Shown in pieces: positions 899-47,635 of a stretch of 64,000 nucleotides of DNA. The notes under the pieces are model-generated. The model made no database searches and was not told where the DNA came from. It saw nothing but the letters and a program-made list of their open reading frames with translations. Origin of the DNA: Octopus bimaculoides (taxonomy: Eukaryota); NCBI RefSeq assembly GCF_001194135.2, contig NC_068985.1:108199979-108263978 (forward strand), in the 5' to 3' direction. How positions within the stretch are numbered: position 1 is the first letter of the stretch; every line of letters begins with the position of its first letter. The position numbers were made by a program, and so were the translations under genes.

Positions 899-1066
899 CT
901 GGGGAAAAAAAAGAAAAGAAAAGAAAAGAAATATCACAAACCTTTTTGAAAGAACACATTAATATTCTAACACTAAAAGTAGAAATTAAGTTTCTTTTAA
1001 ATCTTTGATACAGAGAGTTTGATTTCAACTTTACTTTTTGTTACTATTGATTTAAAGCCTATTAAT

Positions 1067-12913: not shown

Positions 12914-14992
12914 CTGAATTATATATATATATATAAAAAAACGTGTCAACAAAATATTAATATATTTTTACAAGGCAATAGTTCTTGGAATTAATTAGTC
13001 TTAAATATATATTTTTAATAAGGTTTTGAAGATTATTTCAAGATTAAAAACAGAATGTCTGTCTATGTATGTATGTATGTATGTATGTATGTATGTCTAC
13101 ATCTAAATGTAGATGCAACCAGAGAGGAAACATAAATGAAAATATAAGTTGAGTACTTTGTATGTTACTTCATAACTTTATCTTCTGTATTTTTCATAAC
13201 CTCGGAACAAAGTAATTAAAAAGTAATCTTCTTATCAGACAACCAGCCCTTAATTTTAATGTAGCAAAATTATTAATATTTCGTTTTAGAAAATATATAT
13301 TACTTACTCAAAATTCCTCCTGCTGGAACAAACTTGCGAAGTATATTGAAATGCAGGGATAAAAATGTTTCCGCGTTCGAACTTCTGTATTGGCTTACTG
13401 TTATTGAAAATGAAGGTGTCATTTGCAATACTTTTGGTTTGATGATATCAGTCGGGTCTTGTGGCTCAGGAGCATAGCCAGTAATACCGGAATGCATCCT
13501 AAAAATTATTCCGTTGAGACTTCCCAAGCAATTAGTGTTTGGTGCATTTTTCACTTGACCATAAACAAATACACCTGTAGAATAAAGACAATTTATTTAA
13601 AACATTACATAAGAATAAAGTATAAATTTATTTTACATTGAATTTTCAGAATGATAAAAATATTGCTTTTTTTGAATTTGAACACTTGCATTGTATTAAC
13701 AACCAGAAGTAACATTTTAAATCTTGGAGATGAAAATATTGTTTATGCGCCTTTAATAATTGTTATGAGACAGTGGGACAAGCATATCTCCATGGCGAAC
13801 TCCAGCTGGCAAAAATATTGAATCTCGTACCTGCTTGCTCATCAGCCAAAAGAAAGATTTCAGTTTGGTTTCTGCATTGAATACTATCAGTAAAACACAA
13901 GTCTGTCGAACAGTTTAATGGTTTTAATAGAACACCTAGAAAGGGAAAATAAAACACAGAAAAAGAATTTTGAAATATTACCTTCTTGTGTTTGTTGTAT
14001 CTTGAGAGAGTTATTATAGGAATAATGAGCAGACGTGAGTGAATATATGTTTACTGAGTAAAGTGCCCATACAAACATACACACTCAGAGGTATATAGGT
14101 TTCTTAATTGAATACTAAATAAGTCTAGCTACACAGCTAAATAAGACCCAAAAAACAAAAATAAAATCGTAATTTTCTGTAAAATAGTATTAGAACGATT
14201 ACATTAATTGCTGATTGTTGGTAAAGTAATTGACAAAAAAAAAAAAAAAAAAAAAAGATAATTCGATTATGTGAAAATCATTAATTGTTATAAATTAAAT
14301 TCTTTAGCTTTCAAAGTACATTTAAAACTATAAATAATAACATGTAATTATTGTGTTGAAAAACCCTTCCCCGTGTAGCCTCCGACTTTCTTTTATCCAA
14401 AAAGGGTTTTTAAACCCAGTGCATACAACGTATTATTTATACCTCTAATTGTAGTTCGAGATCCAGTTCTAAAAAAAAAAACATTATTTCACGTTCTCTC
14501 GAAAACTTATAAATATTTATGCAATCAATTTTTTCTAGAATTAAACGGTAATTTATTACAAACTAATATTGTGGTATCATGATTATTAACGTATGCTGAG
14601 CATGTTATGGAGCTTTAGAATAAAGAGGTTAAGTAAAATTACATAAAGATTATTCTTAAGAAAGCCGTAAAATTTGTGAATCTCTTCTTTAGTATTTACT
14701 TAAAATCTCACAAATGAACCAAGTAATTAATAAACCCAACCTTGACATGATTGTTCTGTCAAAAGAGAGAAAAAATGCCAGTGTCAATTTGCTCTATTAA
14801 GAAATAACCCTGCAAGCCATCCTTAGTATTCATCAATGGCAGAACATAGTTACAATGGATAAAGCTTCTCTTGTGTTATTTAGAAATGTCTCTGGTAAAA
14901 AGTCTTTACTGTGAAGAAAATAGTTCAAATCAAATACAATATTTTTCTCACCATTAGAAGGTTATTTCTTAATCGAACAAAATGACACTGGG

Positions 14993-15035
<43 letters not shown>

Positions 15036-15123
15036 TTTTTTAAGAGTGGTAATTATTTTATCGGTCACTTTTGCCGAACCGCTATGTTACAGGGGCGTAA
15101 ACAGCCAAACACAGGTTGTCAAG

Positions 15124-15167
<44 letters not shown>

Positions 15168-15232
15168 GTGTGTGTGTGTGTGTATGTGTGTAGGAGTGTT
15201 GTTACAGACACACGCATACATTTAGGCGCACA

Positions 15233-15270
<38 letters not shown>

Positions 15271-15329
15271 GACATACATACACACAGACANNNNNNNNNN
15301 NNNNNNNNNNNNNNNNNNNNNNNNNNNNN

Positions 15330-15373
<44 letters not shown>

Positions 15374-15438
15374 GTGTGTGTGTGTGTGTATGTGTGTAGG
15401 AGTGTTGTTACAGACACACGCATACATTTAGGCGCACA

Positions 15439-15476
<38 letters not shown>

Positions 15477-15558
15477 CATACATACACACAGACATACATG
15501 CACACATATATACAAACATACATACATACACACACAAATACAGATATATATATATATT

Positions 15559-15592
<34 letters not shown>

Positions 15593-18500
15593 ATTTGTTG
15601 ACGCACAAACGGGAGATTAATATCTTTAAAAGCGAAGAAATACAGAAATATTTCATAAGTTCATGTTTTCTTACCAGGGCTGTGAGGAAAAAGTGGTAAT
15701 TCTCTTGTTGTTGTTAAAACTTTCTGATGAGCTGTGTGTGCGGGTACTAAAAAAAAAAATATATATATAAAACAATTTAAAGCTTACTCAATATGAAAAA
15801 TGAACAGAAAACTTTACTTTCGGATTAAACCATTTTTTGAACAGAGAAATTATGGTAGATTTAACACAAATATAGCTTTTTTTACTCACTATAATTCGGG
15901 ACTAAACTTTCGCCAGAAAAAAAAACAAACAAACAATAAAACCAATATCAAACACTGAGGTAAAACTTCATTTGGAAGAGTTATGCTTCTCATACGAGCG
16001 ATTAACTATTGGCTGTTCTAGAGTGGGAAGCAAAAAAAAAATCTATTTGCAAAAGAAACCAAAGCATATTGTTTACCAAGAGATTTTGCAGGAAATACTA
16101 CATCCTACGATGCTCTCCAGTATCCACTGCTCTTTCTGAATGGTGAAGATGGATACTATTTCGGCATAATACCAACAAACCCGAAGACTGCACCAAAAAA
16201 GCAGTTTCCTGCATGGACTTCAATATCAAAGCATATTCTCCAATTACTCCCACCAAGTCCGCAGTAAACCATTACGCCTTATTTTTTTCAAATAATTCAT
16301 TACTACATATTCTCACGTGACTCCATAAGCTCAGTTTAAGTTTCTTATTCTACAGACACACCAGTAATCCAATGTCAATCCTTCGGCTTCTGCAACTGTT
16401 CAACAGTTCACTTCCCCGTTGCCGTCTCCTATTGCAGCGCCTTTCCGGAGTGTACCCATTTACATACACTATCTCCATTATACCTACGTTCGACTGGAGG
16501 ACTTCGAGAAACGGATTCAGGAGGTTCTCAATGATATCTCATACGACGCCCTTCAGAAGGTTGTTCATTCAATCCTTGGCAGTTTAAGGAAACTGGCTGA
16601 CACCACCGGTGGTTACATTGAAATATTAAGATTAACTTTCGTTCTCTCATGTAATAAAGAACATGTATCATTTGATTCAATGAATTTGTAAAAAGGAATA
16701 TGGATTTTAATGCTTACTTACTTTTCACCAACCCTGTATNNNNNNNNNNNNNNNNNNNNNNNNNNNNNNNNNNNNNNNNNNNNNNNNNNNNNNNNNNNNN
16801 NNNNNNNNNNNNNNNNNNNNNNNNNNNNNNNNNNNNNNNNNNNNNNNNNNNNNNNNNNNNNNNNNNNNNNNNNNNNNNNNNNNNNNNNNNNNNNNNNNNN
16901 NNNNNNNNNNNNNNNNNNNNNNNNNNNNNNNNNNNNNNNNNNNNNNNNNNNNNNNNNNNNNNNNNNNNNNNNNNNNNNNNNNNNNNNNNNNNNNNNNNNN
17001 NNNNNNNNNNNNNNNNNNNNNNNNNNNNNNNNNNNNNNNNNNNNNNNNNNNNNNNNNNNNNNNNNNNNNNNNNNNNNNNNNNNNNNNNNNNNNNNNNNNN
17101 NNNNNNNNNNNNNNNNNNNNNNNNNNNNNNNNNNNNNNNNNNNNNNNNNNNNNNNNNNNNNNNNNNNNNNNNNNNNNNNNNNNNNNNNNNNNNNNNNNNN
17201 NNNNNNNNNNNNNNNNNNNNNNNNNNNNNNNNNNNNNNNNNNNNNNNNNNNNNNNNNNNNNNNNNNNNNNNNNNNNNNNNNNNNNNNNNNNNNNNNNNNN
17301 NNNNNNNNNNNNNNNNNNNNNNNNNNNNNNNNNNNNNNNNNNNNNNNNNNNNNNNNNNNNNNNNNNNNNNNNNNNNNNNNNNNNNNNNNNNNNNNNNNNN
17401 NNNNNNNNNNNNNNNNNNNNNNNNNNNNNNNNNNNNNNNNNNNNNNNNNNNNNNNNNNNNNNNNNNNNNNNNNNNNNNNNNNNNNNNNNNNNNNNNNNNN
17501 NNNNNNNNNNNNNNNNNNNNNNNNNNNNNNNNNNNNNNNNNNNNNNNNNNNNNNNNNNNNNNNNNNNNNNNNNNNNNNNNNNNNNNNNNNNNNNNNNNNN
17601 NNNNNNNNNNNNNNNNNNNNNNNNNNNNNNNTATATATATATATATGTGTGTGAGGGTGCAATGGGCCAGTGGTTAGGATAGCGGACTCGCGGTCGTAGG
17701 ATCGCAGTTTCGATTCCCAGTGTTTATTGAACGAAAACACCTAAAGCTCCACGAGGCTCCGACAGGGGTGGTGGTGAACCCTGCTGTACTCTTTCATTAC
17801 AACTTTCTTTCACTATTTCTTCCTGTTTCTGTTGTACTTGTATTTCAAAGGGTAAGCCTTGTCATGCTCTGTGTCACGTTGAATCTCCACGAGAACTACG
17901 TTAAGGGTACACGTATCTATGGAGTGCTCATCCACTTGCACGTTAATAAATGAGCTTCGACGTCATTGGTGCCAAGCTGTATCGGCCTTTGCCTTTCCCT
18001 TGGATAACATCGTTGGCGTGGAGATGGGAGGCTGACATGCATGGGCGACTGCTGGTCTTCAATAAACAACCTTGTCCGGACTTGTGCCTCGGAAGGTAAC
18101 TTTCTAGGTGCAATCACATGGTCATTCATGAACCGAAAGGGGCCACAACGCGATAATAACGCCGGTGTTTTAATGGTGGCAGCTGATGAAGGAGATGTTT
18201 CTANNNNNNNNNNNNNNNNNNNNNNNNNNNNNNNNNNNNNNNNNNNNNNNNNNNNNNNNNNNNNNNNNNNNNNNNNNNNNNNNNNNNNNNNNNNNNNNNN
18301 NNNAAAAAAAAAAAAAAAAAAAATACGATATAGAATAAAAAAGAACAAAAATATGTAAATTAATTTTGATAAAATCCTGTCCTTATTAACTAGTTTGAAA
18401 GTATACTTTAAAGTAAACAACCACTGACTAGTTCATAGGTAAATACATTTTTTGTGTGTGAACATGAAACAGAAGTAGATATATTTACGTTGTGCATTTA

Positions 18501-20051
18501 CATAAATGCATGTATACGTACACTTGGAAACAAATGTATGTCTAATTGAAAGCGTTACAAAGTAATCCAGAATGTAGCTCAATGTTCGAAATAAGGAGTA
18601 GATAGGTTGCGTACATATGTTATTTATATTATTATCATTTATATACATAATAGACCAAATGTTATCAATACACCGAGAACTACGTAATTCGTATGTTTCA
18701 GGGATTCAAAAGTCAACATTGTGTAATTTAGAAATTGACATTATTGGGAAAATGTGTTCAGATATTAGTTATGCTATATAGAAAGAAGTAAAGCAACGAA
18801 GCTTTTGTACTCACCTATTACCGGTTCAGGATCTTCAACAGAAATGAAAAAAAAGAAAACGAAACAAAATGAAAAAAAAGAAAATATATAAATTAATTTT
18901 GATAAAACAGCCTTTCTTTACTAACTAGTTTGAACGTATACTTTAATATAAACAACCACTGACTAGTTCATAGGCAAATACATTTATTTGTGTATGAACA
19001 CGAAACTGAAGTATATATATATTTACGTTGTGCATATACATAAATGCATACATCTGTACACTCGCATAAAAATGTATGTCTACATTTAAGCATTATAAAC
19101 AAATGAATGCAAATCTTTGCTCAATGCTATCTAGGTGTATGTTTTATAGCTAAAAAAACTCTGCACAATCATTGAGGTAAAATTTGTAAAAGTTATGTAA
19201 ATTTTATATTGTTATGACAATATGAATTTCGAAAATATTAATGTTAACGTAAATGCCTAAAATAATTAAGAGATTTATTACATAGTTTTGAAAATATACA
19301 GCATTCAATATGTATGATAATCTAGAAAACAATAATTACAATATCGTTCCAAATATCTATTGACAATATACGTTACTAATATGGCCATCTGTTATGTTAT
19401 ATTGAAGAAAATTAATTTATATTATGGTTCCGAATGTACTATATAATATGTTCTAGTGGAATTGTTATTATTTCATGAATAAGTTCGTAACAAATGCTTG
19501 GAATATAAGCATGTCCTTAATGAAAATATTACATTTGAGAAGTTATCTATAATATGGCTATCGGAATCGAATAAAAATTGATTTACTTCCCCCCCCCCCC
19601 AAAAAAAAAACAACAACCACGTAGTCAATATTATACCAACACGAATAAAATACCGTTAAATCTGTGTCGCAAACTGAAATTGACTATGTTTGCAAAACAT
19701 TGATTGTGACATGTTTTTTATCTTTGAATGATTCAAAAATCTTTTCAAATGTTTTGCATTGTTTAATGTACAAATCAACATTATTTGAAATATGTGTTCA
19801 GATATTAGTTATTCTGTATATAGAGAAGTAAATTAACGAAGTTGTTCTACTCTCTAATCCCCGGTTCATGATCTTCCCTAGAAAAATCAAAGTGAATTAA
19901 TTTTGATAAAACAACCTTTCTGTATTAACTTGCCTGTTTATTTTAAAACAAAGAACCACTGAATACTTCATATACTATCTGTCCATGTATGTATGTATGT
20001 ATGTATGTATGTATGTATGTATGTATGTATGTATGTAGGCAGGTATGTATG

Positions 20052-20098
<47 letters not shown>

Positions 20099-20129
20099 AT
20101 ACACACACATACATACATACATACATGCA

Positions 20130-20161
<32 letters not shown>

Positions 20162-23100
20162 CACTCTAATGAATGAAATTGTTACTGAGAATTTAGAAGT
20201 GATTTTGAAATTTATATATAGATTTACAGATGTTATAATTCATATGATGTCATTAAAATGAACGTCTCTTGTCATATTAACTTACAGAAAATTATTTAAT
20301 ACGTGAAAAAAGCTTTAGACTCTCGCGTGTTTCTGGTCGGAAGTTACGTCTGTGTATGCATTGTTTTTACCCCAGCTTCGTTAAAATCATGTCAGCAATC
20401 AAGGATACAAAAGTGGCGTTGAGTTATTCGGAGCTTGCATCGGTCGGTTGAATGTGTGGTACGAAACCAAACAAAGAATCGTCAACGTGTAGGATTTGAT
20501 AGCCCGCGCGGAGCAGTTGCAACTGCAACAGAGTATCATCAGCAGCAGCAGCTGCATCAGCAACAGGACAACAACAACAGTTGCTGGAATTTATGTTGAA
20601 GAAGTGTGAAAATACTTTAGGTTTAGAAGTAATACATTTCTAAATTTCGCAGAGAGATTTATGCAGTAGTGATACGTTGAAGTAGTTGTATGCTGTCAAC
20701 CTAATGTGACAGTCCCATGAAGGGAATAATACTACTGTTGTTTAGACCTAGGAAGTTGCACCGCTTCTTGCCGGCCTTGACGCATTTCCTGTATCCTTAT
20801 GTTTACAAGGAGGAGAGAAGCACATCCACTCAGCTAAGCCTGCATCCAAAGACATGTTTCTGAGTCTCTGCTCGTCATCAGTCTGGAGATGTACAGCAGT
20901 GTCAGCTGTTCACTATCAGTGAACTAAGGTAACACCTCTTATTTTTCGAGCACCATCCGGAGTATTCGAGCGGTTCCAAGCAGTGCTATTTTCTGCAAGT
21001 GCTCCACCCTTATTGCAGCCTTTATTTGTTCCACATACTTCTCGAGATTTTTGCTCACTGTTCCCAGGGCTCCGACAATTATTGGTACTACTACTACCGT
21101 TTTCATCGACCCCAACTGCTTAACTTCCCCAGCTAACCTGTCATATCTCTCAACTTTTCTTTCTTCCTTATCGCATACCTTGTTGTCAGCTGGGCATGCT
21201 TTATCTATGATCCAGCATAATTTGTTTTCGTTCTCAATTAAGACTGGCTTCCTATTCTCTATTTCATGGTCGCACTGAATCATAAAATCCCATAGGGTCT
21301 TTACATTTCTATTTTCGACGATGCCGTCAGGTTTGTGGTCGTACCAATATTTTGCTTTGTCAGATCTATACTTGTTGCAAAGTGTCCAATGCACAAGCCT
21401 GGCTATATTGTCGTGGTGCCTCTGATATTCCTTCTGGGCTAGTGGCGTACATTGGCTGGTAATATTCCATACGGTTTCACCATTTTGTCCACAGATTCCG
21501 CCCTTATCACTTTCTGCTGTGTTGTCTATTCTGTATTTTATGTAGTTTGTTCTTAGTGCTTGCTCTTAGGCAGCACAGATTAAAGCCTCCGTTTCCGATT
21601 TTAAATCACTTTACTCATCCACAGCCATCTTTTTTCTCTATCTGTCTTATCTTCAACATCTCTATGAAATTGACCATGCATTCTTTTCTTTACCCACCTA
21701 TTTTCAGTTTCATTCGTTTTCAATTTCTTGTATAGTGCTTTATCTTTGCAATCTTCCATCCTACACAAGCCTGACCTTCTTACTTCTAGTAATAGCGGTT
21801 CCGTGGCATTTTTTACATACTATGCTATGTTTTCTTCTGCTCTAACGCTATGTTCGCATCCAATAAGTCCTCTTCCCCCTCTTTTTCTTGGTACATACAG
21901 TCTGTCTGTGTTACTTTTTGGGTGGAGTGACCCATATCTAGTTAGCAAGTTCCTTGTCTTTCTGACTAAGCTGTTTAGTTCGTCTACTGTCCTTGCGATT
22001 ACCCCTGCTCCATATCTAAAGAGTGAAACCTCCTAGGTGTTGATAGCTTCGATCTTATTCCGTCCCTTTAATTTCGACTTAAGGATCAGTCTCAGTCTGC
22101 GCAAGTACTCCACCTTAAATTTTTCTGTCATTTCTTTCTCCATCAATTTATCCATTTCCAAAATCCTCAAGTACTTATAGCCCGTCTCTTCTATCTGTTT
22201 CATAACCTCCCATGACGGTATTGTTAGCCCGTTCATACATTTGGTTTTTGCCTCTCTATCTCTTTTGCCTCTCTTTCTCAGTCCGAACTCCATTCTGATA
22301 TCAGCACTGAAGGTATACACCGTATCAACGAGGGAACTGATTTGGGCTTCATCTTTACCATAAAATTTGAGGTCATCCATGNNNNNNNNNNGGGAACTGA
22401 TTTGGGCTTCATCTTTACCATAAAATTTGAGGTCATCCATGAATAGCAAATGGTTGACTTTTTGTTGGCGGCTTTTGAATACATACCCAGCTTTTGATTT
22501 CCTCAGAATCAGTGTCAGTAGTATGAAGTATAGTACAAAGATCAGTGGGGACAGGCAGTCCCCTTGGAAGATGCCCCTCCTAATTTCTACTGTCCTTAAA
22601 CTTCTTCCGTATGCTGTCAGGTTCGTCCTCCAATTTGCCATACATTTTCCAAGCAATCGCTCAACATTCTATGCAATCTCGAATTAGTTCAAACACTCCA
22701 TAATTCAAGAATGTGGGGCCATATCGTACGCCTTACAATAGTCGATCCATGACATGGCTAAGTTATTTTTCATCCTCTTGCAGTCTCTGAGTACAGTTTT
22801 GTCTATCACGATTTGATCCTTGGTACCTCTGCATTTACGCTTGCAACCCTTCTGCTCATGTGGCAGGACTCCATTTTTTTCCAGATGTTCGTACATTGCC
22901 TCTATGAGTATTCCTGTCGATATCTTCCGCGTAAGTGGCAAACAGGATATCGGCCTGTAATTGTCTACCGTATTGCCTTTTTCGATGTTTTTCAGGCACA
23001 GCACTGTCCTACCCAATGTCAACCACTCTGGTGTTACTTGGTCGGCATTTAACAAGGTGTTGCGTTGCGCAGCTATTCGTGCATGACATTCACCAATTCT

Positions 23101-24199
23101 TTTGATCCAGTAGCCTCGAACTCCATCTGGTCCCAGAGACTTCCAGTTGCTCATTTTTCTGCTGATTTCCTTTACTTCCCTAACTGAAATGACTAGTTTT
23201 GCCTGTTTCGGACAGACTGCTATTTGTTTCAGTTCTTGCAACCATTCAGCATCCTTCTTGTGCTCCGTGTCTTTGCTCCAGATGTCACTCCGAACCCTTT
23301 GACTTTCAATGTTATCTAGTATCAACTTTTCATCTCTACACTCTCCATTTATTTCTTTATAGAATCTCTTCTAATCTTCTCTGAATAACCTATTCTGGTG
23401 GTATCCCTTCATTCTTTGGCCGTATCTCACCATATTTGCTTTCTTTGCAACGAGGCACTGTTTCAGTTCCTCCATTACTACTTTCAGGCCCTTTCTTTCA
23501 ATAGTATACTTCGTTTTCAGTGCCCTGTATTTTTGCTCGCTTTTAAGCTCCCCTTTCTCTTTTCGGTCTAACACAGAGATTTTTTTCGAAAGCATATCTA
23601 ACCCTGCCCGGATTCTTCTGTTCCACCATGGATCTTTTCTTCTGTCACTCCTATTATGTTTCTTTTTCTTGACAACGCCACCCACATTTTCTGCTACAAC
23701 AATACTTGCTGCCTTGATCAAATTATTTGGTTCTGTGATGTTGTTTGTTCTAATATATTTCAGAATTTCATTGACATTTTTTGTTTCTTGGTTCAATTTC
23801 CATCGATCAACCTTTTTAAGGTTGCAAATAATGTCCATATCGTTCTCCAGTAGTCTTACCTTTATTCTATCGTAGATTGCCTTTTGTTCATCTGTCATAT
23901 CGCTATTACTTTTATTGTCTTCTTTTAGATCATCTATATGTCTTTCATCAAGTAAGCTAACACTGCTCCTTCCTGTGCTATGAGATTACTCTTATTAATA
24001 AGAACTGTATTTTCATTGTTATCTCTGCTGCTATTTTCCATGACCCATCTTTTGATAGCTTCGAGCTCTACTTCTGTGAACCAGCAATTTTTTCTTATTG
24101 CTCTAATTTGATCACATAGTGAGTTGAAACAATCCCCTTTTTCTCCAATGATCATACATACGTTGTCAGTAACCCCTAATTTGAGCACCATTTTCTTTA

Positions 24200-24269
<70 letters not shown>

Positions 24270-24613
24270 NNNNNNNNNNNNNNNNNNNNNNNNNNNNNNN
24301 NNNNNNNNNNNNNNNNNNNNNNNNNNNNNNNNNNNNNNNNNNNNNNNNNNNNNNNNNNNNGAGACCTCAAGAGACAAGTTAGAAGTTCATGTAGGTGTTA
24401 TGCCTAGGGTACCATATATTTGGATTTGTACAGTTTTGTTCCAGTGAATGTTTAAGAAGCCATAAGAAAATTATGTGTTTGTTTTAAAATTTGAGATCAC
24501 ATAGACAGTATTTTACGTAGGATATGGGCAGTTCCCATGAGCACTATCTTTTGAACTTCAGCCATTTTGGGGTTTCCTGGTATCTGAGCTAGGTAGTAAT
24601 CAGCCCGTTTCGC

Positions 24614-24665
<52 letters not shown>

Positions 24666-26307
24666 GAGTGAGAGAGCATTGCATACCATCAAAGTGACAC
24701 TGAGGTACAAATATATGGAGCCCGACATACTCATCATGATTACCCGTCTGATAAGAGTACATCAAGCACATGCATCACAACTATATGTGCGCGACATGGT
24801 GATCTCATATCGAGATAGACAGTGTATGACATAGGTGGGGGCCTAGTTAGAAATTTTTTTTAGGTCGAGTAGTCCACCCCGCTCAAAAGGTCTCTGAATA
24901 AGCAAATAAATAAAAACAAGATTCCATCATTTTTAAACGCTATCTGGACAAATAACTTCAAAGGATGCGAGACAAGCCACCCATACATGGATACATCTCA
25001 GTTAACAATAACTCCGTATTTAAAAGTGGCTTCAAAATTATCTGTCAGATTGCCTGGGGTTATTTTGACCGAATTTATCATAATTTATACCATAATTTAT
25101 CAAAGTAAGTTTATATCAAATGTAAATATAATTATGTTAACGTATGTCTAAAAGACAATTAATAAAGTTAAAACATTTTTTTGTTTTCAGAATTACCAAC
25201 ATTATGATGTAGTTCTCTTTTGCTTTATTAACTCATTTCTATTTGAAATTTCTCTAAAATTTATTCCTGTCAAATTTTTACAGTATAGTCGTTAAAAACT
25301 CATAGGACTGTTTTATCTGTATCATGAAATTGTCAAGCTATTAAAACTTCGATTTTTGTACAACTTGTTCCAACTAGCAGCAGATCACGTTAGCAGTTCC
25401 AGATTAAATAGTTCAGGAAGTTGGATGTTGTACACAATCTTAAAAGGCTTCTTATCATGCGACTTAATTGTACTTTGTTGATGACCAGAATAATCATTTT
25501 GCCATCTTTTCACATATTCTCCGCGGAACCTCGATATTAGGTTTCCCCACTGAGTAGGTGGTAGAATGCTGAGGGTACTTTGCATCATTTCAGATGCCAA
25601 GCACCCATTTGCGGTCTATGTGCTATTAATAAGTTTAAGTATTTAGTTAAAAAAATGAGGAAAAGTTTTAAAGAAAATATCTACATACCTTGTTTACGCG
25701 TATCTAAAAAAGTAATAAAAATTATACATAGTTATGTAAGTATCAAAATATATAAATATTTATGATAGCGTATAATAATTAAAATGTAGAGGATGTACCA
25801 CAAACATTGCCCAGACAACCTTAACATCAAATTTATTCTAAGTTGGGACCTCGTGCCATACGCCCTTTACACATTTCAAGCTTATAACACATAAATACAT
25901 AAATAATTTTCCTTAACAGACACTTCTCTAATTAACATTATTCTAAGACAAATCAAAGAAACAAAATAGAGTCTATCACCTTTAAACGCTATCTGTACAA
26001 ATATCTTCAAAGAATGCGAGACAAGCCACACATACATGGATACATCTCAGTTAACAATAACTCCGTATTTGAATGGGTCATGATTCCACTAAAAGTGACT
26101 TCAAACTTATATGATTGCTTGGGGGCAATTTTGACCGAAACATACTATAATTTATCAAAGTTTATACCAAATGTAAATATATTTATGTTAACGTATGTGT
26201 TTAGACATACGTTACCACAGTTTGCGGTCTATGTGTTACTAATGAGTTTAAGTATTTAGGACACAAAATGAGGAAATGATTTAATATATTTTGAGAGATA
26301 TTTGCAG

Positions 26308-26377
<70 letters not shown>

Positions 26378-29300
26378 TGGGGACACGATGAAATTCTAGT
26401 GCGGACTGTGTGCTACAACAAAAACAATTACTGCTGACTTTTCTTTTTTCGGTGTTATGACAAAAAGAAAAAAAAAAAACAAAGAAAGAACAAAAAACAA
26501 AACAAAAAAAAACATGGTGTTGCCAGATATAGCTGTTTAGAATTTTCTGGACAACTGCGTCTTATTCTTCTGCAGAAAGAGGAATACAATCACTCCATGT
26601 TGATTAAATAACCTTTGGAATAAAGTTTGGCCGTCAAGAGATATTACACTATTGCATACATATACACTGAGTGGCTATTGAGACACAACTTGTGGGATTT
26701 TTTTTCACTCTTTTCCCAAGCCCCAATTTTTGTCTAGAGCTCGGGGTTTTGCAACAAGATGCAAACTATTTGGTTGCATCACCGGTAACTTGAGAGGCAT
26801 GTTCTAAAAAGGATTGGTCATTTGCCCCTACACGGGCTCACTAACTCTTCAGATACTTCAGTATGCCTTAGCTCACTTTCGGAGGTTTGTAGCAACATCA
26901 CCTGTATGCGCAGATACACAAGTCGCTTTTGGCTGTTGAAGGATGATGATCTTCAAAACACTCACTATCCTATCATATGGCTATGTATGATAAATATTTA
27001 TTGTGTTTAAAGTTATTGCTGTTTCGAGCGAGGTTTGATCTATTGCATAGAGACAATCCATATGTTAGTTTAAGAATTATTAACTGTAGTCATGTAAAAT
27101 ATTAAAAATGTTGATTAAACATATTTTCTTTCATTCAAACGATAAGACTTCGAGATCCCCGAATTGTTTGGAAGTTTAAATTTTCCAGAAAACCATTGCA
27201 GATTTTTCTCTAAAAAATCTTCAGCAGACTTTCAGCCAGGACAAAACAGTCTTCATTCCCATTCAATGGGTCAGAGATACCAGTGTGTCTTTGGTGTGTT
27301 CTGATTCATATTTTAGTTTTTACTTGTTTCACTCATAAGATTTTGGCCATGCTGGAGCGCTGCCTTAAAGAATGCATTAAAAACATGTTGCTCGATTCTA
27401 TTTGACAAACGACTAAGTTACGGAGCGTAAAGCAATCAATATCAGTTGTCAAGCTGTGGTAGGGACAAATGCAGACACAAAGACACAAACGCGCGCACGC
27501 ACACGCATCTATCAGTTTCGCTCACAAGGCATTGGCTGGTCCGGAACTATAGTGGAAGACAATAGTTCCAGACTATATTGAACTGGAAAACAGATGTTTG
27601 TAAAGCGAGTTTGTTAACCAAACAACTAAGCAGGTTGATATATGAAAATTGATAAATAAATCTTTCATAAATTGCAATATTATGAATATAAATAAATGAA
27701 ATAATTATCTACTTACCATGTATCACTATCGCTGAAAAAGCAAAAACAATAAAAATATTATAGCGATATGAAAATATATAAATAATTAGACTCACATACG
27801 CTTAAAGAATAACAAATAGAAACCAACACAAACCATATTGTATAGTTAGTTTAGGACTGAAGATCATTGATTATTGCAGATGGGCCTTCTGATCAAAAGT
27901 ATTTGATCCTTCCATCAGAAGAGTTAGATTAAGCATCACGAATTAATTAAGCATTCTTTAGAACAACGAATGTCCGTCCAGTATGTGTATGTACTTTCGA
28001 CACTGTCATTATTGTCTGGCTTAAGTGACGAAGACAATATCACATCGTGTTCCACTATGTATACTTGGGCAATATGCACTCGCATTATAATGAAATGTCG
28101 TGTGAATTTGACATAAACTTTTGTATTAGCTGTTGTCGTTCTCTGTTTTTATCATCGTAATCATTGCCGTATACGCACACGCACAAACGCGTATGTATAA
28201 TATCAGGTCATCCCATAAGTTCTGTCCGAATTTTGAATAAAGAAAACAAGTGATCAAATGTTATATTTAATTGAAATTGAATCATCAATGTACTTTCCCT
28301 GATTATCTATGACTTCTTTCCATCTATTTACAAGCTTTTTAATCCCTTCATTGTAAAACTCTTTTGATTTCAAAGCGAAGAACTCCTTTCCAAGTTGTTG
28401 AAGATGACGATGAACAGTTGTATGGTTTGAACTAAGCTTTATTGCCAATTCTTCAACTAATAACGCAGGATTTTCTTCAAGTAATGCCTCAAAGAGCTTA
28501 TCATCAAACTCAACTGGACGTCTTGTTCGATCTTCATCTTCAAGGCAGAAATCTCCACTTATGAATTTTGCAAATCATCTTCTGCAAGTTCTTTCATTCA
28601 AGCATTCTATCCCATAAACTGAGCGTATGTTTCGAGTCGCTTCGGCTGCAGAGTTTTTTTTTGCACTCATAAAGCATTATGTGTCTTAAATGCTCTTTGG
28701 ATACTTCAATGTTAGAAAGGGTTTTAGTCAAAGAAATTTAAATTCTATTATTCTGTAAAATAATATTTAATTAGTTTAAATGCACACAAATGCATAGAAA
28801 TAATTTTTAATTCCATTAGACATTCTAAAATACTATTAAAAAAAAGGTAAAATCGGAGAGAACTTATGGGATGACCTGATACTTCTATTGAATAGCACAG
28901 GGTGAAATCTGAAGGTGGACGAGCTTTATGCTGTATTCTACTACGTTCTTATCAGAATATATCATAACTTTTTCACTCCTTTTCAAAGACCCAACTGTTA
29001 TCTGGAGATCGGTGCTCTACAACGAGACACAAGCTACTTAACTTCGTCATCATTATCCTGAGATGAATTTTTTGGAAAGGATTGTCTGTTCATTCGCCCC
29101 GACGCATACCCACATTTTGTTATTCAGTTAGTTCAGCACGCGTTAACTCGATTTCAGAGGCTTGTAGCAACATCATGTGCATGCGCAGATGACGCACTCG
29201 TCGTGGTGCATTTCTACATCAGCTGAGAAGAGAACGGGGGATTTCCCAATGCTGTGACCCGTGGCGTTATGATGCTGTTGAGAAAAGACCCGAACAAGTA

Positions 29301-32300
29301 GGACCAAATATTGGGCCCATAACTCATTACATTTTTGCCTGGCTTGCCACCTTCTTTTTTTGCACATGTAAAATATTAAAATGTATTTTACTTAATTATT
29401 AATATTTTCTTTTATTCAAACAATAGGACTTCGAGATCCCCTTGAAAGTTTAACAAATTCCAGAAAACCATTGCAAATCTTTCACTAAAAGATCTTCAGC
29501 TGTCTTTCAGCCAAGACAAGAGAATCTTCATTCCTATTCAATGGGCCATAGATACAAATGTGTCTTTGGCATATGCTGATTCATATTTTGGCTTTTACTT
29601 GTTTTCTCATAGAATTCCGGCCGTACTGGAGCACTGCCTTAAAAGATGAATTAAATACAAATTGATCCCATTGATTATTCTAAAGTCTACTACTTATTCT
29701 ATCGACCATTTTGCCAAACGACTAAGTTACAGGGACGTAAAGAAAACGATATTGGTTGTCAAGCTGTGGTGGGGACAAATGCATTAAGACTGAACCCGAA
29801 AACAGGTTCAGTCTCACGACACGGGTGCAAAGCGAGCTTGTTAATCACATAACCAAACTTGTTTACTTATAAATTTTGATGAATATGACTTTTATTAAAT
29901 GCAGTATTGTGAATTTAAATATATTATGAAATAATTATCTACTTACCTTGATTCACAAATCCTGAAAAAGTAATAAACATATTATAGGGATATGAAAATA
30001 AGAAAATATAAATAATTATGTTCAAATATATTTGAAGAATAATCACTACATATAAACAATATTGTATAGTTGGTTTAGGATTAAAGATCCCTGATTATTG
30101 CAGATGAACCTTCTGATCAACTATATCTAATCCTTCTACCAGAAGAGAGAGATTAGGCATTACATATTACTCAGCCATTCTTTTAAGAATGAAAGCCCGT
30201 CGAGTACGTGTATGTACTTCAAACTTACTTCAAACTGGAACTTATTTCGACGGTGCTATATTGTCTGATTTTAGTTACAAAGCCAATATTACACGATATT
30301 CCACTAAAAAATTATACCTACATGAGTATTGAAAGAAATATCGTGTGAATTTGACAAATTCGACAAAGTTTTTGCAGATATTTCGACCACGTAGAGGTTT
30401 GTTTTTTGGCTTGTGTTTCCTCTAAATATTTGTTGTCATCGATCTTTGCTGTCATTCATTCCGAAGGCACCAATCTCATCCCCTAAGGCATCAATCCCAT
30501 GCAAAACATCAATCCTGCATAAGAAGTTTTGAAGTTTCAATGGCATTGCGCCCAGCGCTCCGATCACCACTGGCATCACTTTTACATTACTCTCTCGCAT
30601 TCCGTACAGTCTTGCAATTTCCACTTTCAATTCGGAGTACTTGGTGATTTTTTCAACCTCTTTACTCACAACATTTATGTCATTTGGTATGGCTACATCA
30701 ATGATCTGACAGTATTTGTCTCTCTTATTCAATAAGACAATATTCGGCCGACGGTGTTCGATTACACGATCCGTCTGAAAATCATAGTCCCAGAGTATCG
30801 TTACTTTTCCATCCTCCTGCATAACTTTACTTGGTACATGCTCATACCAGTTCTCTGTTACTTCATATTGATATCTACGGTATTTTCATTCTTACTGGGT
30901 TACTTGAGTGTATAGCTGACACTGGAGAAATTCTCGACTTCGACCACGGTGTTGCTTCAGTCACCTCTTTCAGTGGACTTTAAAGAATTATGAATAATTA
31001 CCGAAAGTCCTTGGCCCAGAATGCCTCATTTTAGTCGATAGCAGCCTTAACTATGCAAAGTATGCGTAGTGTTATGGACTCGTTTTTACCGTTTACTTCA
31101 GTTTCCGTACATTGCTGATTTGTGGGTTTGTGTAAAAAGTTTGTTACCATATGTAAGACGGATCTGGCTATCAGCCGAGTCTATAGTGTAAACTTCATCT
31201 AATATCTCCATCGGCTCGATAGAATAAGTCCCATTAATACAATGGAGTTAGTTGGATTTCCTATACCACTTCCCTATAAAAACTGGTCTTGTGCTTCATG
31301 GCTACAACTAAAAATAAATGCAAAAAAAAAATATATAGACGAGCAAGCAAAAATCTTAGCTACAAACGTAAAAGAAAATAAGTTGTCTGATTTAAAGATG
31401 ACTTGAATTGATTTATGAATGAAAGAGATAATATAGTATTGGTGTTTCAAGCAATCCAAATTTGAACATACTTACGTGAAGGAAGGTATTCTGCAAAGGA
31501 AGAGAAATATGAAAATTGAACAAATGATTAATCTCAAAATATAATTTATGGTATGAAATAATAAAACATAAAGAAAAATGTACCAGAAGAGAAAGCGGTT
31601 TCATCATTTTTTAAGCACTTACATAGATAATGTTATGAGAATGTATTTTTCTTAATTGTAATATTGTAATAATTAAGTTTTAGTTATCTTTGGATTGAAA
31701 ATGTTTAGCCCATTGGTTGGTTGTGAACCAGTGAAGTCACCATATATATAGTCACCAATTAATCTCAAAGAAAAAAGTGTTGCCTTAGAGTTACCTCCTC
31801 TTTGCTTCCCTCGGCTCAGAGAAATTACTACCTTAGACGAGAAGATACTTGCATTTGGGGGAGAAACAATGCTAGATTGTTCTGGAAGTGCCTTAGAGTA
31901 TAAAAGACAGTGGCTGAAAAGTGAGGGACGACTTTGGATTATATAGCTTTCAAATCTATGCTCGCTGCCAAGACCATTCGTCAACCGTCATCTTCGGCAT
32001 TGAAATCTCTGTGATCGAGAACCTACATCTTCATTCAATACTTCTTGGACTTATGACTCTGGTGATTATTTTACTTTGTCCAGTATTTGACTATCGATCC
32101 AATTATTTTGCATCAAGTCTGTACTGCCATCATTGTAAACTTTATCATGTTTTTCAATACATAACTGAATTGTATAGACCTGTTTGCTTTCCTTGCTGGT
32201 TTCGATTGCGGACTTTTCAATAAAAATTTTTCCTTATTTTGGGTGTACAGCATGTTACATACTAGGATAGCGATTATTCTGAAAATGTTTGCTGGATCAG

Positions 32301-33792
32301 TCTAAAATACGATTAATGTAGTATTATGTATTTTTAGAATATACTACGTAATTAGTCTTTCCTACATTGCACAGTAAGTATAATTCAGTTATATCTTACC
32401 ATCAACTATATTTCTTTTCCACATCAGAGAAATTTTATTAAGAATGGTCATAAAAAAATAGGGGAGAAATAAAGAAATTGTGAAGGAGGATTTATGAATC
32501 TAACATTATTGAAAATCATCATATTTTTTTATTCCAATACTATTAAGTCGCTTATCTCTCAACCGTTAGTCAGAGTTTATTGCTGTCAATGTTTGATACG
32601 ATGAACATAAATTTGGTGAGGTAGATCAATGAGATGTGGACAGAGTGGTTACGTATTGTAGAGAAGCAACCTGCTGTTTGTAACAACGATCCCTTGAGCT
32701 GGTTTAAGCTACCATGCCTATCTATTTGGTAGCTTTCTTCAGTTACATATTTACATATTTTGGTAGATTTCTTCAGTTACGTATTTAAAACCCAGACACA
32801 ATGTGATAATATCTATGATCTCTGCTTATGACTTTCAACAAAATTTCATAGATGAACCAAGGGAGCATTCAAAGGAGACCTTATGACAACCATATCCTCA
32901 GCGTAGTGAAGAACAGTGGTACACTGCTGTGATTGTAGCTATGGTGAGATTTATTGATAATACTTTAATCGTTACTATAAATAGCTTAAAGTATATAAAC
33001 GATAATGTAATTTTCTAGATATTATATATGAGTAAATTTATGTTTTTTATATTCTGAAATATGTTTCGGAAATTTCGTGTTATCTTATGTATTTATTACT
33101 AATTTTAAAAGTTTAAAAGCAGAATATTGGATAATTTATCAAACATGTCACATAAAAAGTTTCATCGTATTTTATGAATTAACCGACGCATTTACAAAAA
33201 CAAAAAAAAAACCCAAAACAAGACAAAAACAAAACAAAACATAAAACCCCAAAACTCGTCATTTTTCAATAAAGTTTCATAAAATTCTATACATTTTATC
33301 CGTAATTTCTACAGGTTGTATTTAAGCGAAAATATTACATATAGAACGAAATCTAGGATAGTAGTGCTAAACTTTTTACATTAATCATTGCAGATCTGTA
33401 CGTTTGATACCTAGCTGTAGAGCATGGCAATCATGGATACATTTAGATAAATAATAACATATAATTTTAGATTTTATAATTTAAACAACCATAACAAATT
33501 CATTTCAACAAGACGTATATGGTAAAGTCATCTCAGTTTAAATATTTCGTTATCATGACCTCAGGAGCTTGTCATTAAAGTGGTATGAATGATAAAATTA
33601 CCTTCTTCAAACAGTTCTTCATTCACTTTGTATTTAGTGACAACCATTGATGTTAATGGAGTTACGAAATTATACTGTGAAAAACAAGAATATTAGTTTT
33701 AGGACAACAGTAGTATTAATAAGGAAACTATACATGAAATATTTCCATCATCGACATTACATTTCTTACGTTTAGATTGCTTATCATTATTA

Positions 33793-39598: not shown

Positions 39599-42500
39599 AG
39601 AGAAAGAATAAAAATAAAGTTTCTTGTATATGAAGATGAAATATGTTGTTATGAAGAAATTGTGATTTCTTCATAACACATACGTACACATTTATATCAG
39701 ATAAGATTATAGTATAATATTCCCTTTTAAATGACAAGATGAGAATTTGATTTGAAACAATAACTTACATATATTAAATTTGAATTATTTTGACGATCCA
39801 CATCATACTGTATTTTGAGTGAGCCTGCAACAACACCATCTATTCCTGAAGTTTCTTCTTGTTGTTTACGACTTGGGTTGTATTTGATGTAAACCTCTCT
39901 ACTGCTGATGTACTCAATTAAAGCAGAATCCAGCTCTGTTTTAAAAACAAGCAATATCTTAATTTGAATATTGATAACAAAGTTGAATAAATACCTCTTA
40001 TTTCAATATCACTTAACCTGATGAGATATAATTTAAACGACTTGATGGACTATCTAATGTTGACTGCGAATCAGTGTCATATTTACTGTATGATAATGTA
40101 AAGTGAACAGCGGCAGAATTAAATAATGTTTACTGCGGGTGGGTAAGTTTAGTTTGTCTGCAATAATGGACTGCGTAACATTTGATGATGAGATGGTACA
40201 AAATGTTCACAGCACAATATCTATTTTATGACAGTGTAGTAAGAAACTCTAGGTGAAGAGCTGAATGGCTGAAGGTCTTCAGAGAACAAGTACCTTCTCA
40301 TTTGTAAGTATTTCATCTCTCAATCCCTTAAAGTCTAAGAAACCGGCCACACCCAGGATACCCCTCTTATACTCCACTTTGTACTACTGTTTACATTGTA
40401 ACTAGTACCTGCTAGGTCTTTAAGACCACCCAGAGCCTAGAATTCCTTGGCTGTCGTAACCACTTCCGTTTGAGACACCAGTTAAACGTAGGGTATTATT
40501 GTACCTTCCGAAATTTTCTTTTATTCTTCCTTCACTACTAATGTATATAGTGAGGAATCATTACGCATACTATCGGAATGGTAACAATTAAGTTTGGAAT
40601 TTACTGTAACGCACTGTATTCTGTGTCAAGGGCAATCTTAATAAGTGATCGCCTGTGTAGTTATGCAATGAGAGTTGTTAGCAAGAGTATATTTAACAAG
40701 AGTGTGCCGTAACAAGAGGTAGTATAACATTTAATTTGATATTTGTATAGTAACCGACTGTTAACTGGAGGATAGATAACACTTGATATATGGGAAAATA
40801 TAATGCTTGCTCCAGAACAATGAAATGTTTACCGCAGCGCAGTGTAATTCTACTTGGAGAAGGAGACACTACTACAAGAGTGGGCACTTGGACATTATAT
40901 TGTTGACTCTAGAATGATATAATCGTTAGGAAGAGACAATTTTATCCCAGAGACATTATAATATTAGTAAATTGTAAACAAAATGACGTACGATTCCGAT
41001 GTGTATCATTATTCTAAGTGAATTGTATTTTCTTTATACAAGAATAAAAAGCAATTTTTAGACTATTTATTGATAATTGCATCTCTATAGTACTACCTAC
41101 GAGTAATAGTCAGAAAAAGTTGCCTCATGTTTCATATAGCCTGTCATCGGTATGTCATACTTATCTGTTACCCTTCGCAATGTAGTTGAATGATTATCAA
41201 TGCTAATCCGTCGGCAGTATGCCTTATATCTTTGCTGTTAATTCCCCACCTTCTATTTCTATATATGGTTCTTTGTAGTATTTTGTACAAGTATAGAACT
41301 TGATATAAGACTAGCGACTGTTGAACGTTTACTTCTGTTGACGTTTATATCAGCTTTATTTACTGCCTAAAGAAATGTTTAGATTTAACCCAGTATAAAG
41401 AAAAATTTTCGCTACAGAAACCTTTCTATTATCAGGAATGTGATTTTCTTTAATTTTGTAGTGCGCCCACACTGTGGAACATATAAAAAAACAGTGATTA
41501 AATAAGATTGATGAAGATAATGACAAATGAAGGTACAGAAAGAACCACACAAAAATGATTTGCCAACCTTTGTCAACGGTAATATCCGTTAATTTATTAT
41601 TTGTAATTTTTGGTACAGACACGTGAATAATATCTTGCGGTTCAGTAATGAAAACTTCAACTAAAAAGTCATCAATAATTTCACCAGTGGTCACATGAAT
41701 GTCGTGCCTGTATTTATTGTTCTGTCGTGTCAGAAGTTCTTGGTAAGTCAAGTTGTAAACTATATACTTCTGTGGTTCAACATTAACAGATATATCAAAG
41801 GCTCTTGTAAAGCGGTGTCTGGAAAATGATAAAAAAGAATAATTGAAATATTTTGGAGATATTCCAAAACTTCAAGAAATATCAAATAGTTGGGAAAATA
41901 TAAAATTACTCGACTTCAACAGTGCCAGAACTTTGTCCTGTTTCGCTGGTATATTTGTAAATATCTTTAGCAACTGATTTTTCCTTTACTTCTCCTACAG
42001 TCACATGTCCATCAATTTCCCTGCAATCGAAAATAAAATTAAATAAAAATAATTAACATTGAAAAATCTCAAAAATTACAGCGGTTAAATTTGACAGTTT
42101 GTACCAAAGGAAAGGAAAACACTCCATCCCGAAATAAAAGTATTTTGAAAAATGAAAATATATCAACTAGATTATGGCTGTCAGATCACAGTTTACTGAA
42201 AATAGCCACCCTCGGTTTCCAGCACGGCCTCCAGGCGCATGCATTTCTCATAGTGTCGTTGGGTGGACCTACGAACGCTTCCTTGATCTTGGCCACCAGC
42301 TCATTCTTAATGTTGCTGGCAGAGTATTTGACACATATTATAATCCATGATATTGCGATTGGAGGAATGAAGATACCAGAAATTAGAGCTGTTGATGTCG
42401 TAGAGATTCTTCGACAACCACGTCTGACTCATTCTGGAAGTATGGCAAGGGGCCGAATCCTGCTGTTACACATATGACCTTTCAGTAGCAATCCTATACA

Positions 42501-45464: not shown

Positions 45465-45497
<33 letters not shown>

Positions 45498-47219: not shown

Positions 47220-47318
<99 letters not shown>

Positions 47319-47588: not shown

Positions 47589-47635
<47 letters not shown>

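What the first reader, a model, noticed from the sequence alone, without database searches (positions are those of the whole stretch)
14741..31490. Chain of six symmetric phase-1 micro-exons (15,15,15,15,18,15 nt) forming a modular linker
Seen: between exon 8 (ends phase 1) and the C-terminal-domain exon (starts phase 1) lie six micro-exons, each with a polypyrimidine tract + AG and a GT donor. All are multiples of 3 and end in G or C, so no junction can create a stop. Joined they read ...LFEE-EYLPS-RFVNQ-AIVIH-DTRKQ-DPEPVI-EQSCQ-GVLLKP. The ORF track shows none of them. Inference: any subset keeps the frame (up to 64 combinations), giving a combinatorial linker in the region corresponding to the variable linker of vertebrate ITIHs, reminiscent of micro-exon genes.
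Basis: partly seen in the sequence, partly recalled or inferred. Interest (0 to 1): 0.85.

Follow-up and report, generated by a model that had tools for sequence, protein, structure and literature searches.

The report
Octopus ITIH-like gene micro-exon linker
Five of the six proposed 15-18-base micro-exons are real and already in the public Octopus bimaculoides gene model; the sixth is a chance match, one 72-base exon was missed, and a neighbouring sister gene shows that such micro-exons are mixed and matched by alternative splicing.

Summary
The window is Octopus bimaculoides. It is 100% identical to GCA_001194135.2 and has the same gaps. The gene lies on the minus strand and is an ITIH4-like gene with a RefSeq model, XP_052823892.1.

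They have strong splice sites, far beyond chance, and RefSeq already annotates them. RNA contigs or reads confirm exon 8→ME1→ME2 and ME5→next exon.

ME6 (EQSCQ, 14741-14755) is spurious. Its donor is weak (GTTGGG), and a candidate of that grade turns up about 60 times by chance in this intron. Its acceptor is absent in O. sinensis and in the sister gene. Contigs from five RNA runs skip it.

RNA also shows at least three more 15-nt exons (GGGCACTGTTAATAG, ATCCGAAACTTTATC, CTCAATTGTTTATAG) that are absent from the assembled letters. They probably lie in the N gaps; a copy of ME5's upstream flank runs straight into gap 18204-18303.

The array grew by tandem duplication of exon-plus-intron units.

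Combinatorial use is directly annotated only in sister genes: in the adjacent one, three cassette micro-exons give five RefSeq isoforms. For this gene, two different exon chains are seen in different runs. The 64 combinations are not shown. It is a new example of a known kind, of moderate interest.

The parts
33602..33674 (-). Exon 8 (YNFVTPLTSMVVTKYKVNEELFEE + G). It starts in phase 0 and ends in phase 1, with donor G|gtaatt.
   Evidence: Translation matches XP_052823892.1. RNA contigs from X15 and X29 run from it into ME1+ME2. The exon is nearly identical in sister genes, whose contigs (X16, X20) continue with EKSLPS... instead.
31476..31490 (-). ME1, 15 nt, AATACCTTCCTTCAC (E)YLPS, phase 1-1; ...tttgcag / gtaagt.
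   Evidence: Loose end after exon 8 in the X15 and X29 contigs reads ME1+ME2 exactly. It is in the RefSeq model and the older model. EYLPS is kept in the O. sinensis and O. vulgaris orthologue models.
29947..29961 (-). ME2, 15 nt, GATTTGTGAATCAAG (R)FVNQ, phase 1-1; ...ttttcag / gtaagt.
   Evidence: RNA as for ME1 and RefSeq. Its unit is a tandem duplicate of the ME3 unit, 74% identical over about 400 nt including the exon.
27717..27731 (-). ME3, 15 nt, CGATAGTGATACATG (A)IVIH, phase 1-1; ...ttttcag / gtaagt.
   Evidence: In the RefSeq model and the older gene model. AIVIH is identical in the O. sinensis and O. vulgaris models. Passes the strict splice scan. Not seen directly in RNA here, because loose ends show only 30 letters.
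25689..25703 (-). ME4, 15 nt, ATACGCGTAAACAAG (D)TRKQ, phase 1-1; ...tttttag / gtatgt.
   Evidence: In the RefSeq model and the older gene model. Passes the strict splice scan. Its flanks are homologous to the RTTVL and HPNRV micro-exon units of the sister gene. Not seen directly in RNA here.
18815..18832 (-). ME5, 18 nt, ATCCTGAACCGGTAATAG (D)PEPVI, phase 1-1; ...gttgaag / gtgagt.
   Evidence: Four raw reads of X38 and contigs of X15 and X28 read GGGCACTGTTAATAG|ME5|72-nt exon. In RefSeq.
15675..15746 (-). It is the true neighbour of C1.
   Evidence: Loose end upstream of C1 in X15 and X36 maps here. Contigs of X15, X36, X20, X29 and X28 join it directly to C1. In RefSeq. Homologous exons exist in O. 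sinensis (about 111 nt) and in the sister gene.
13831..13935 (-). C1 exon, 105 nt, phase 1-1 (GVLLKPLNCSTDLCF...ADEQAG). It occupies the position of the DPHF... start of the ITIH C-terminal domain.
   Evidence: comparison with canonical ITIH3-type proteins.
14741..14755 (-). ME6 (EQSCQ) as proposed: rejected, not an exon.
   Evidence: It lies inside the intron between the 72-nt exon and C1, which contigs from five runs splice out. Donor is gttggg, 3/6. The acceptor AG and pyrimidine tract are absent in O. sinensis and in the sister gene. Not in RefSeq.
19854..19872 (-). Decayed copy of ME5 (ATCATGAACCGGGGATTAG). It is 19 nt and its donor GT is replaced by AG.
   Evidence: 68% alignment of the ME5 unit to 19757-19972.
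18204..18561 (-). Assembly gap 18204-18303, plus a copy (18313-18561) of ME5's upstream flank, 83% identical, that runs into the gap. This is the likely hiding place of another ME5-like micro-exon.
26701..30219 (-). Two tandem copies of a unit of about 2.2 kb (26701-27996 and 28969-30219, 70-74% identical). Each carries one micro-exon (ME3, ME2).
   Evidence: alignment.

Best explanation
The region is the linker-coding part of an Octopus bimaculoides ITIH4-like gene (two VIT domains, one VWA domain, and a C-terminal region that lacks the DPHF cleavage motif). The linker is built from a string of very short exons, all in phase 1-1, so each can be included or left out without changing the frame. 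In the assembled reference the string is ME1-ME5 (15, 15, 15, 15, 18 nt) followed by a 72-nt exon. RNA shows at least three more 15-nt exons that the assembly lacks.

Shown: the exons and their splice sites; splicing of ME1, ME2, ME5 and the 72-nt exon; the absence of ME6 from the RNA contigs seen; growth of the array by tandem duplication of exon-plus-intron units of about 1-2 kb, including one dead copy; the same architecture in the neighbouring sister gene, where three micro-exons behave as independent cassettes.

Inferred: this gene also uses its micro-exons in alternative combinations. The product would be a secreted protein with a variable, exposed linker. By analogy with the protease-susceptible region of human ITIH4, that linker could act as a variable protease bait.
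For: Identity and gene model.

RNA junctions: exon 8→ME1→ME2; GGGCACTGTTAATAG→ME5→72-nt exon; 72-nt exon→C1.

One 887-nt X29 contig holds 120 nt between exon 8 and the 72-nt exon. The RefSeq chain gives 78 nt. The contig's stretch starts with ME1+ME2 and ends with CTG|ATCCGAAACTTTATC|CTCAATTGTTTATAG.

Splice-site statistics. Duplicated units and the dead copy.

Sister gene: exon structure, isoforms, collinear homology of introns and micro-exon units. O. sinensis and O. vulgaris orthologue models carry EYLPS-RFENQ-AIVIH followed by many units of about 5 aa.

Function by analogy: human ITIH4 is cleaved in a protease-susceptible region and then inhibits the protease (PMC7793589). Family members occur in octopus ink (PMC10142993).
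Against: ME3 and ME4 were not seen directly in RNA here; they rest on two gene models and on orthologue peptides.

No transcript skipping any of ME1-ME5 was observed, and RefSeq lists a single isoform for this gene.

The two different chains upstream of the 72-nt exon come from different runs. They could reflect haplotype structural variation or an unassembled near-identical copy rather than splicing.

Logan contigs drop rare variants, and raw-read depth was low (4-16 reads at 6% sampling).

No functional data exist for any octopus ITIH-like protein linker. Pfam does not detect the ITI_HC_C domain in this protein.
Confidence: 0.75

Rival explanations
1. The micro-exons are real but constitutive. 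The linker is simply split by many introns. The different chains seen in RNA reflect copy-number or sequence differences between haplotypes or individuals in a tandemly duplicated, poorly assembled region, not regulated splicing.
For: RefSeq has one isoform for this gene. The ME5 form (X15, X28, X38) and the DPKLY-PQLFI form (X20, X29) were each the only form laid from a given run. Tandem units and assembly gaps show the region is structurally unstable.
Against: Two sister genes with the same architecture have isoforms that differ by whole micro-exons. The X15 contig begins exactly 30 nt (k-1) upstream of the ME5/72-nt junction, which hints at a branch there within one sample; this is an inference from assembler behaviour.
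Confidence: 0.3
2. The RNA-only exons and the longer 120-nt chain come from an unassembled, nearly identical second copy of the gene's 3' half, not from this locus.
For: None of the three 15-mers is in the window, in L003, or in the sister-gene loci L002 and L004, even with 2 mismatches allowed. O. sinensis has an 8.2-kb tandem duplicate of the region from the 72-nt exon to C1.
Against: The X29 contig links them to ME1+ME2, the 72-nt exon and C1 with no mismatch. A duplicated ME5 flank runs into gap 18204-18303, which offers a place for them inside this gene.
Confidence: 0.15
3. The short AG...GT segments are chance matches that a reader, or a gene predictor, strung together; they are not exons.
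For: True for ME6: weak donor, about 60 equally good candidates by chance, not conserved, and skipped in RNA.
Against: ME1, ME2 and ME5 are read directly in RNA. ME1, ME3, ME4 and ME5 are 4 of only 5 strict candidates on the sense strand, against 0 antisense and 0.77 in shuffles. The peptides are kept in other octopus species.
Confidence: 0.03

Closest known systems
Schistosoma micro-exon genes (MEGs)
   Same: Runs of very short symmetric exons (multiples of 3) separated by long introns. The products are secreted, variants arise by skipping exons, and the arrays grow by duplication (abstract of bioRxiv 10.1101/2023.06.21.545858; details of variant generation from my own knowledge of DeMarco et al. 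2010).
   Different: In MEGs almost the whole coding sequence is micro-exons, and the small proteins have no relatives outside flatworms. Here the micro-exons make up under 10% of a 1050-aa conserved multidomain protein, and only its linker.
Human ITIH4 proline-rich / protease-susceptible region
   Same: Same protein family and the same position, between the VWA body and the C-terminal region. It also lacks the DPHF consensus that ITIH1-3 use for bikunin linkage: the octopus proteins have SPGVLLKP / SPVILIKP where ITIH4 has SVILPLPG.
   Different: No sequence similarity within the linker itself. I have no evidence that the vertebrate region is encoded by micro-exon arrays. Protease-bait function is shown for human ITIH4 only (PMC7793589).
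Alternatively spliced bait regions of invertebrate thioester proteins / alpha-2-macroglobulins (Drosophila TEP2, scallop CfTEP, snail BgA2M, BgTEP2, BgCD109)
   Same: Tandemly duplicated exons encode a hypervariable, protease-exposed region of a secreted defence protein and are alternatively spliced (PMC7016707).
   Different: An unrelated protein family. Those exons are larger and mostly mutually exclusive (one chosen). Here they are 15-27-nt cassettes that can be combined.
Phase 1-1 symmetric exons in disordered regions of extracellular proteins
   Same: Phase 1-1 symmetry allows insertion, duplication and skipping without a frameshift (PMC3632108, title and abstract; the 1-1 rule for extracellular modules is from my own knowledge).
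   Different: That rule concerns domain-sized modules. Here the units are 5-6 codons.

Membership tests
[quoted passage not shown] | N-terminal VIT domain followed by a VWA domain | tested here: met
   Pfam VIT (two stretches, E=6e-43) and VWA (E=1e-18) in XP_052823892.1. About 35% identity to vertebrate ITIH3/4 over 75% of the query.
[quoted passage not shown] | ITI_HC_C C-terminal domain (PF06668) | tested here: not met
   No PF06668 hit at E<=0.01. By eye, the C1 exon aligns with the start of that domain (…LKP.NC…LCF versus DPHF.V…..CF), so this is a divergent rather than absent C-terminal region.
ITIH1-3 type (bikunin / glycosaminoglycan-linked heavy chains) | DPHF(I/L/M)(I/V) cleavage and transesterification motif at the start of the C-terminal domain | tested here: not met
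   Canonical proteins from O. sinensis, Lingula, Patella and trout have GDPHF..; this gene has HSPGVLLKP at that position. In this respect it is ITIH4-like.
Schistosome-type micro-exon genes (MEGs) | Symmetric micro-exons, multiples of 3, with long introns | tested here: met
   ME1-ME5 are 15-18 nt and the 72-nt exon follows them. All are phase 1-1, with introns of 1.5-6.9 kb.
Schistosome-type micro-exon genes (MEGs) | Micro-exons make up most of the coding sequence of a small secreted protein without relatives elsewhere | tested here: not met
   78 nt of micro-exons (150 nt with the 72-nt exon) in a 3150-nt coding sequence for a protein with clear ITIH relatives across animals.
Schistosome-type micro-exon genes (MEGs) | Protein variants made by skipping individual micro-exons | tested here: inconclusive
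   Met in sister genes. For this gene, two different chains are seen but no proven skipping.
Protease-bait inhibitors of the ITIH4 kind | Cleavage in the linker followed by VWA/MIDAS-dependent complex with the protease | not testable with these tools
   Biochemical property; known only for human ITIH4 (PMC7793589).

The most novel reading that the evidence does not exclude
The tandem cluster of octopus ITIH4-like genes uses fast-duplicating, fast-diverging phase 1-1 micro-exons, combined by alternative splicing, to produce a repertoire of protease-bait linkers. This would be a diversification system for secreted defence proteins, parallel to the spliced bait regions of thioester proteins but built from freely combinable 5-6-codon cassettes. 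Part of the exon array would be hidden in assembly gaps of the reference genome.
Probability: 0.2. Interest if true: 0.7.

Novelty: new member of a known kind. Interest (0 to 1): 0.45.

Why it matters
This is a clean, checkable case of how a disordered linker can be built and varied from 5-6-codon exons. It shows duplication of exon-plus-intron units, a dead copy, and cassette use in a sister gene.

It also shows that short-read assemblies and automatic models under-report such arrays: at least three expressed micro-exons are missing from the reference.

If the linker is a protease bait, as in human ITIH4, the octopus cluster would be a further example of splicing-based diversification in invertebrate defence proteins.

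In itself it is mostly annotation-level knowledge. Five of the six exons, and the sister-gene isoforms, are already in RefSeq. I found no paper that describes them, but those searches cover open-access text only.

Tried and rejected
1. Read laying on long stretches failed twice: microsatellites tripped the 'people' filter; low-complexity 33190-33257.

2. Anchoring contigs on ME5 alone (a 20-nt match) placed nothing. The middle of the chains (57 nt in the X29 contig, 72 nt in the X15 contig) therefore stayed unread, and ME3 and ME4 could not be read directly.

3. A protein search with the linker region, aimed at transcript-derived fragments, returned nothing from O. bimaculoides.

4. The O. sinensis orthologue model P0002 spans 240 kb, so no DNA was returned. 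It is probably a fusion across tandem genes. None of its linker peptides lies in L001.

5. The newer chromosome-scale assembly has the same gaps.

6. I considered whether ME5 (DPEPVI) is the counterpart of the DPHFII cleavage motif of ITIH1-3. I rejected this: the homologous position of DPHF is the start of C1 (HSP|GVLLKP), not the micro-exons.

7. I tested whether micro-exons diverge faster than their flanks. Exon identity was 3-12 of 15-18 and flank identity about 58-84%, against random baselines of about 5/15 and 37±18%. The exons are too short for a firm statement; they are clearly not better conserved than their introns.

8. The A>G differences in X38 reads on exon 8 are on the + strand, so T>C in the mRNA. 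They fit reads from sister genes, not A-to-I editing.
Full report
**Where and what.** Each proposed micro-exon follows an AG and precedes a GT.

A protein search with the concatenated exons identified the gene as an Octopus ITIH-like gene. The window is 100% identical to Octopus bimaculoides GCA_001194135.2, chromosome CM046605.1, 108.21-108.26 Mb, and has the very same N gaps.

The current RefSeq product of this locus is XP_052823892.1 (1050 aa). It has two VIT stretches and one VWA domain; Pfam finds no ITI_HC_C.

**The observation.** The following exons translate exactly to residues 810 onward of XP_052823892.1:
- exon 8 (33602-33674)
- ME1 (31476-31490)
- ME2 (29947-29961)
- ME3 (27717-27731)
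- ME4 (25689-25703)
- ME5 (18815-18832)
- a 72-nt exon (15675-15746)
- C1 (13831-13935)
- C2

The real reading is LFEE-EYLPS-RFVNQ-AIVIH-DTRKQ-DPEPVI-VPAHTAHQKVLTTTRELPLFPHSP-GVLLKP. Five of the six micro-exons are therefore right and already annotated. An older gene model (P0001) also carries ME1-ME4.

ME6 (EQSCQ, 14741-14755) is not in the model.

**More than chance?** I scanned the 19.7-kb interval between exon 8 and C1 for in-frame segments of 9-33 nt. The strict criteria were an upstream tract at least 75% pyrimidine plus AG, and a donor matching GTRAGT at 5 or more of 6 positions.
- The sense strand has 5 such segments, four of them ME1, ME3, ME4 and ME5.
- The antisense strand has none, and block shuffles give a mean of 0.77.
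- ME2 enters when the pyrimidine threshold is lowered to 65%.
- ME6 has donor GTTGGG (3/6). At that grade there are 66 sense and 84 antisense candidates and about 56 in shuffles. ME6 is what chance gives.

**RNA.** Public O. bimaculoides RNA runs were laid on short stretches.
- After exon 8, the X15 and X29 contigs read ME1+ME2 exactly. Contigs in X16 and X20 read EKSLPSLRPF... and come from a sister gene that shares exon 8.
- Upstream of C1, the X15 and X36 contigs read ...RELPLFPHSP. That sequence maps to 15676 onward and revealed the 72-nt exon.
- Contigs of five runs (X15, X36, X20, X29, X28) join the 72-nt exon directly to C1. They splice out the interval that holds ME6.
- Upstream of the 72-nt exon, four raw reads of X38 and contigs of X15 and X28 read GGGCACTGTTAATAG|ATCCTGAACCGGTAATAG. 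That is ME5 preceded by a 15-mer that is not ME4.
- Contigs of X20 and X29 instead read CTG|ATCCGAAACTTTATC|CTCAATTGTTTATAG (DPKLY, PQLFI).

One 887-nt X29 contig contains both exon 8 and the 72-nt exon, with 120 nt between them. The RefSeq chain gives 78 nt. The 120 nt start with ME1+ME2 and end with the DPKLY-PQLFI pair.

None of the three extra 15-mers occurs in the window, in L003, in the sister-gene loci or in the O. sinensis locus, even with two mismatches allowed. ME3 and ME4 could not be read directly, because loose ends show only 30 letters and 15-nt pieces are not placed.

**The gaps.** All five gaps lie in introns and no exon abuts one.

The 250 nt upstream of ME5 (18847-19099) are repeated at 18313-18561 with 83% identity, and that copy runs straight into gap 18204-18303. 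Another ME5-like exon is therefore expected inside that gap. The gaps probably mark collapsed tandem units. This would explain why expressed micro-exons are missing from the reference and why the RefSeq chain is shorter than the X29 contig.

**Origin.** ME2 and ME3 sit in tandem copies of a unit of about 2.2 kb (26701-27996 versus 28969-30219, 70-74% identical).

A third ME5-like copy at 19854-19872 has lost its donor and is 19 nt long, so it is a dead micro-exon.

A block upstream of ME4 is repeated at 24900-25147, where a retrotransposon follows.

**The sister gene.** The next gene upstream (L004; XP_014784808-12) is collinear with this one through the linker introns. Its linker is encoded by micro-exons of 27, 24, 18, 15, 18 and 15 nt plus a larger exon, all phase 1-1.

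Its five RefSeq or older isoforms are identical except for PHFSDP (18 nt), DHLFQQ (18 nt) and HPNRV (15 nt). These are present in the combinations ABC, AB, BC, B and A. The junction codon switches between Ala and Pro, as phase 1 predicts.

A second sister gene (XP_052823894-96) differs by an 18-nt and a 30-nt segment. These are automatic models, but models that differ by whole 15-18-nt exons usually rest on transcript evidence (my inference).

**Other species.** The O. sinensis and O. vulgaris orthologue models keep EYLPS-RFENQ-AIVIH. They continue with many units of about 5 aa, such as EPEFY and PEAEI.

In O. sinensis the intron just downstream of ME5 is 79-83% identical, but the exon at that position is an unrelated 30-nt segment with AG/GTGAGT. 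The 72-nt exon is about 111 nt there. The ME6 acceptor does not exist there, nor in the sister gene. The micro-exons are not better conserved than their flanks.

**How it most likely works.** Shown: a linker encoded by a duplicating array of frame-neutral micro-exons.

Inferred: alternative inclusion gives linkers of different length and sequence in this gene, as it does in its sister genes.

The linker sits where human ITIH4 has its protease-susceptible region. Like ITIH4, the octopus proteins lack the DPHF motif of ITIH1-3. Peptides of cluster members were found in octopus ink, so these are secreted proteins. A variable protease bait is therefore a reasonable but untested function. It would parallel the spliced bait regions of invertebrate thioester proteins.

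**Known or new.** ME1-ME5, the 72-nt exon and the sister-gene isoforms are in RefSeq. I found no paper on them: 'microexon' + 'octopus' and 'inter-alpha-trypsin inhibitor' + 'cephalopod' returned nothing relevant. The mechanism resembles schistosome micro-exon genes, but the gene fails their definition. I file it as a new member of a known kind.

**Verdict.** Interest is moderate.

Noticed in passing
window 39700-58957 (-): The gene has a tandemly duplicated N-terminal module. VIT-coding exons occur at about 51965, 50019 and 47881, and again at about 46068, 41871 and 40002. RefSeq joins them into one protein with two VIT domains. The O. sinensis and O. vulgaris orthologue models have the same double VIT.
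   Followed up: partly
window 23374-23985 (-): The older gene model (P0001) splices ME4 to an open reading frame of a retrotransposon (GRSSVSLLDERHIDDLK...) and ends there. This is either an artefact or an alternative 3' end created by the element. Reverse-transcriptase-like ORFs fill 20942-23985, and a mariner-like fragment lies at 28257-28574.
   Followed up: no
window 15890-15901 and 16464-16493 (-): Two further in-frame segments (12 nt and 30 nt) have good splice signals in the intron between ME5 and the 72-nt exon. Neither appears in the contigs seen.
   Followed up: no
window 33514-33534: A 19-21-nt piece of the intron after exon 8 matches a stretch of the transcript about 150 nt upstream of exon 8, in contigs of this gene and of a sister gene. 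It is either a chance match or a small exon-derived fragment.
   Followed up: no
window 33636 and 33642: X38 raw reads show A>G on the + strand (T>C in the mRNA) in some reads over exon 8. These are most simply reads from sister genes that share this exon.
   Followed up: partly
window 740-958 (-) and L004: The window lies inside a tandem cluster of ITIH4-like genes on CM046605.1. The next gene downstream starts at about 958 and is the orthologue of O. sinensis XP_029636479. The gene upstream (L004) begins about 5 kb beyond this gene. The O. vulgaris annotation fuses three of them into one 2709-aa protein.
   Followed up: partly
L001 1653-3725 and 9865-11997 (O. sinensis): O. sinensis carries an 8.2-kb tandem duplicate of the segment holding the counterpart of the 72-nt exon and C1. 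Its RefSeq model P0002 spans 240 kb and skips a separately called 204-aa C-terminal gene, so that model is probably a fusion.
   Followed up: partly
X36 contig on window 13842-13936: A 598-nt contig matches C1 with 4 mismatches. It shares the upstream 72-nt exon sequence but continues downstream with ...RAAKIYIYG..., unlike this gene. It is a close relative or a chimeric contig.
   Followed up: no
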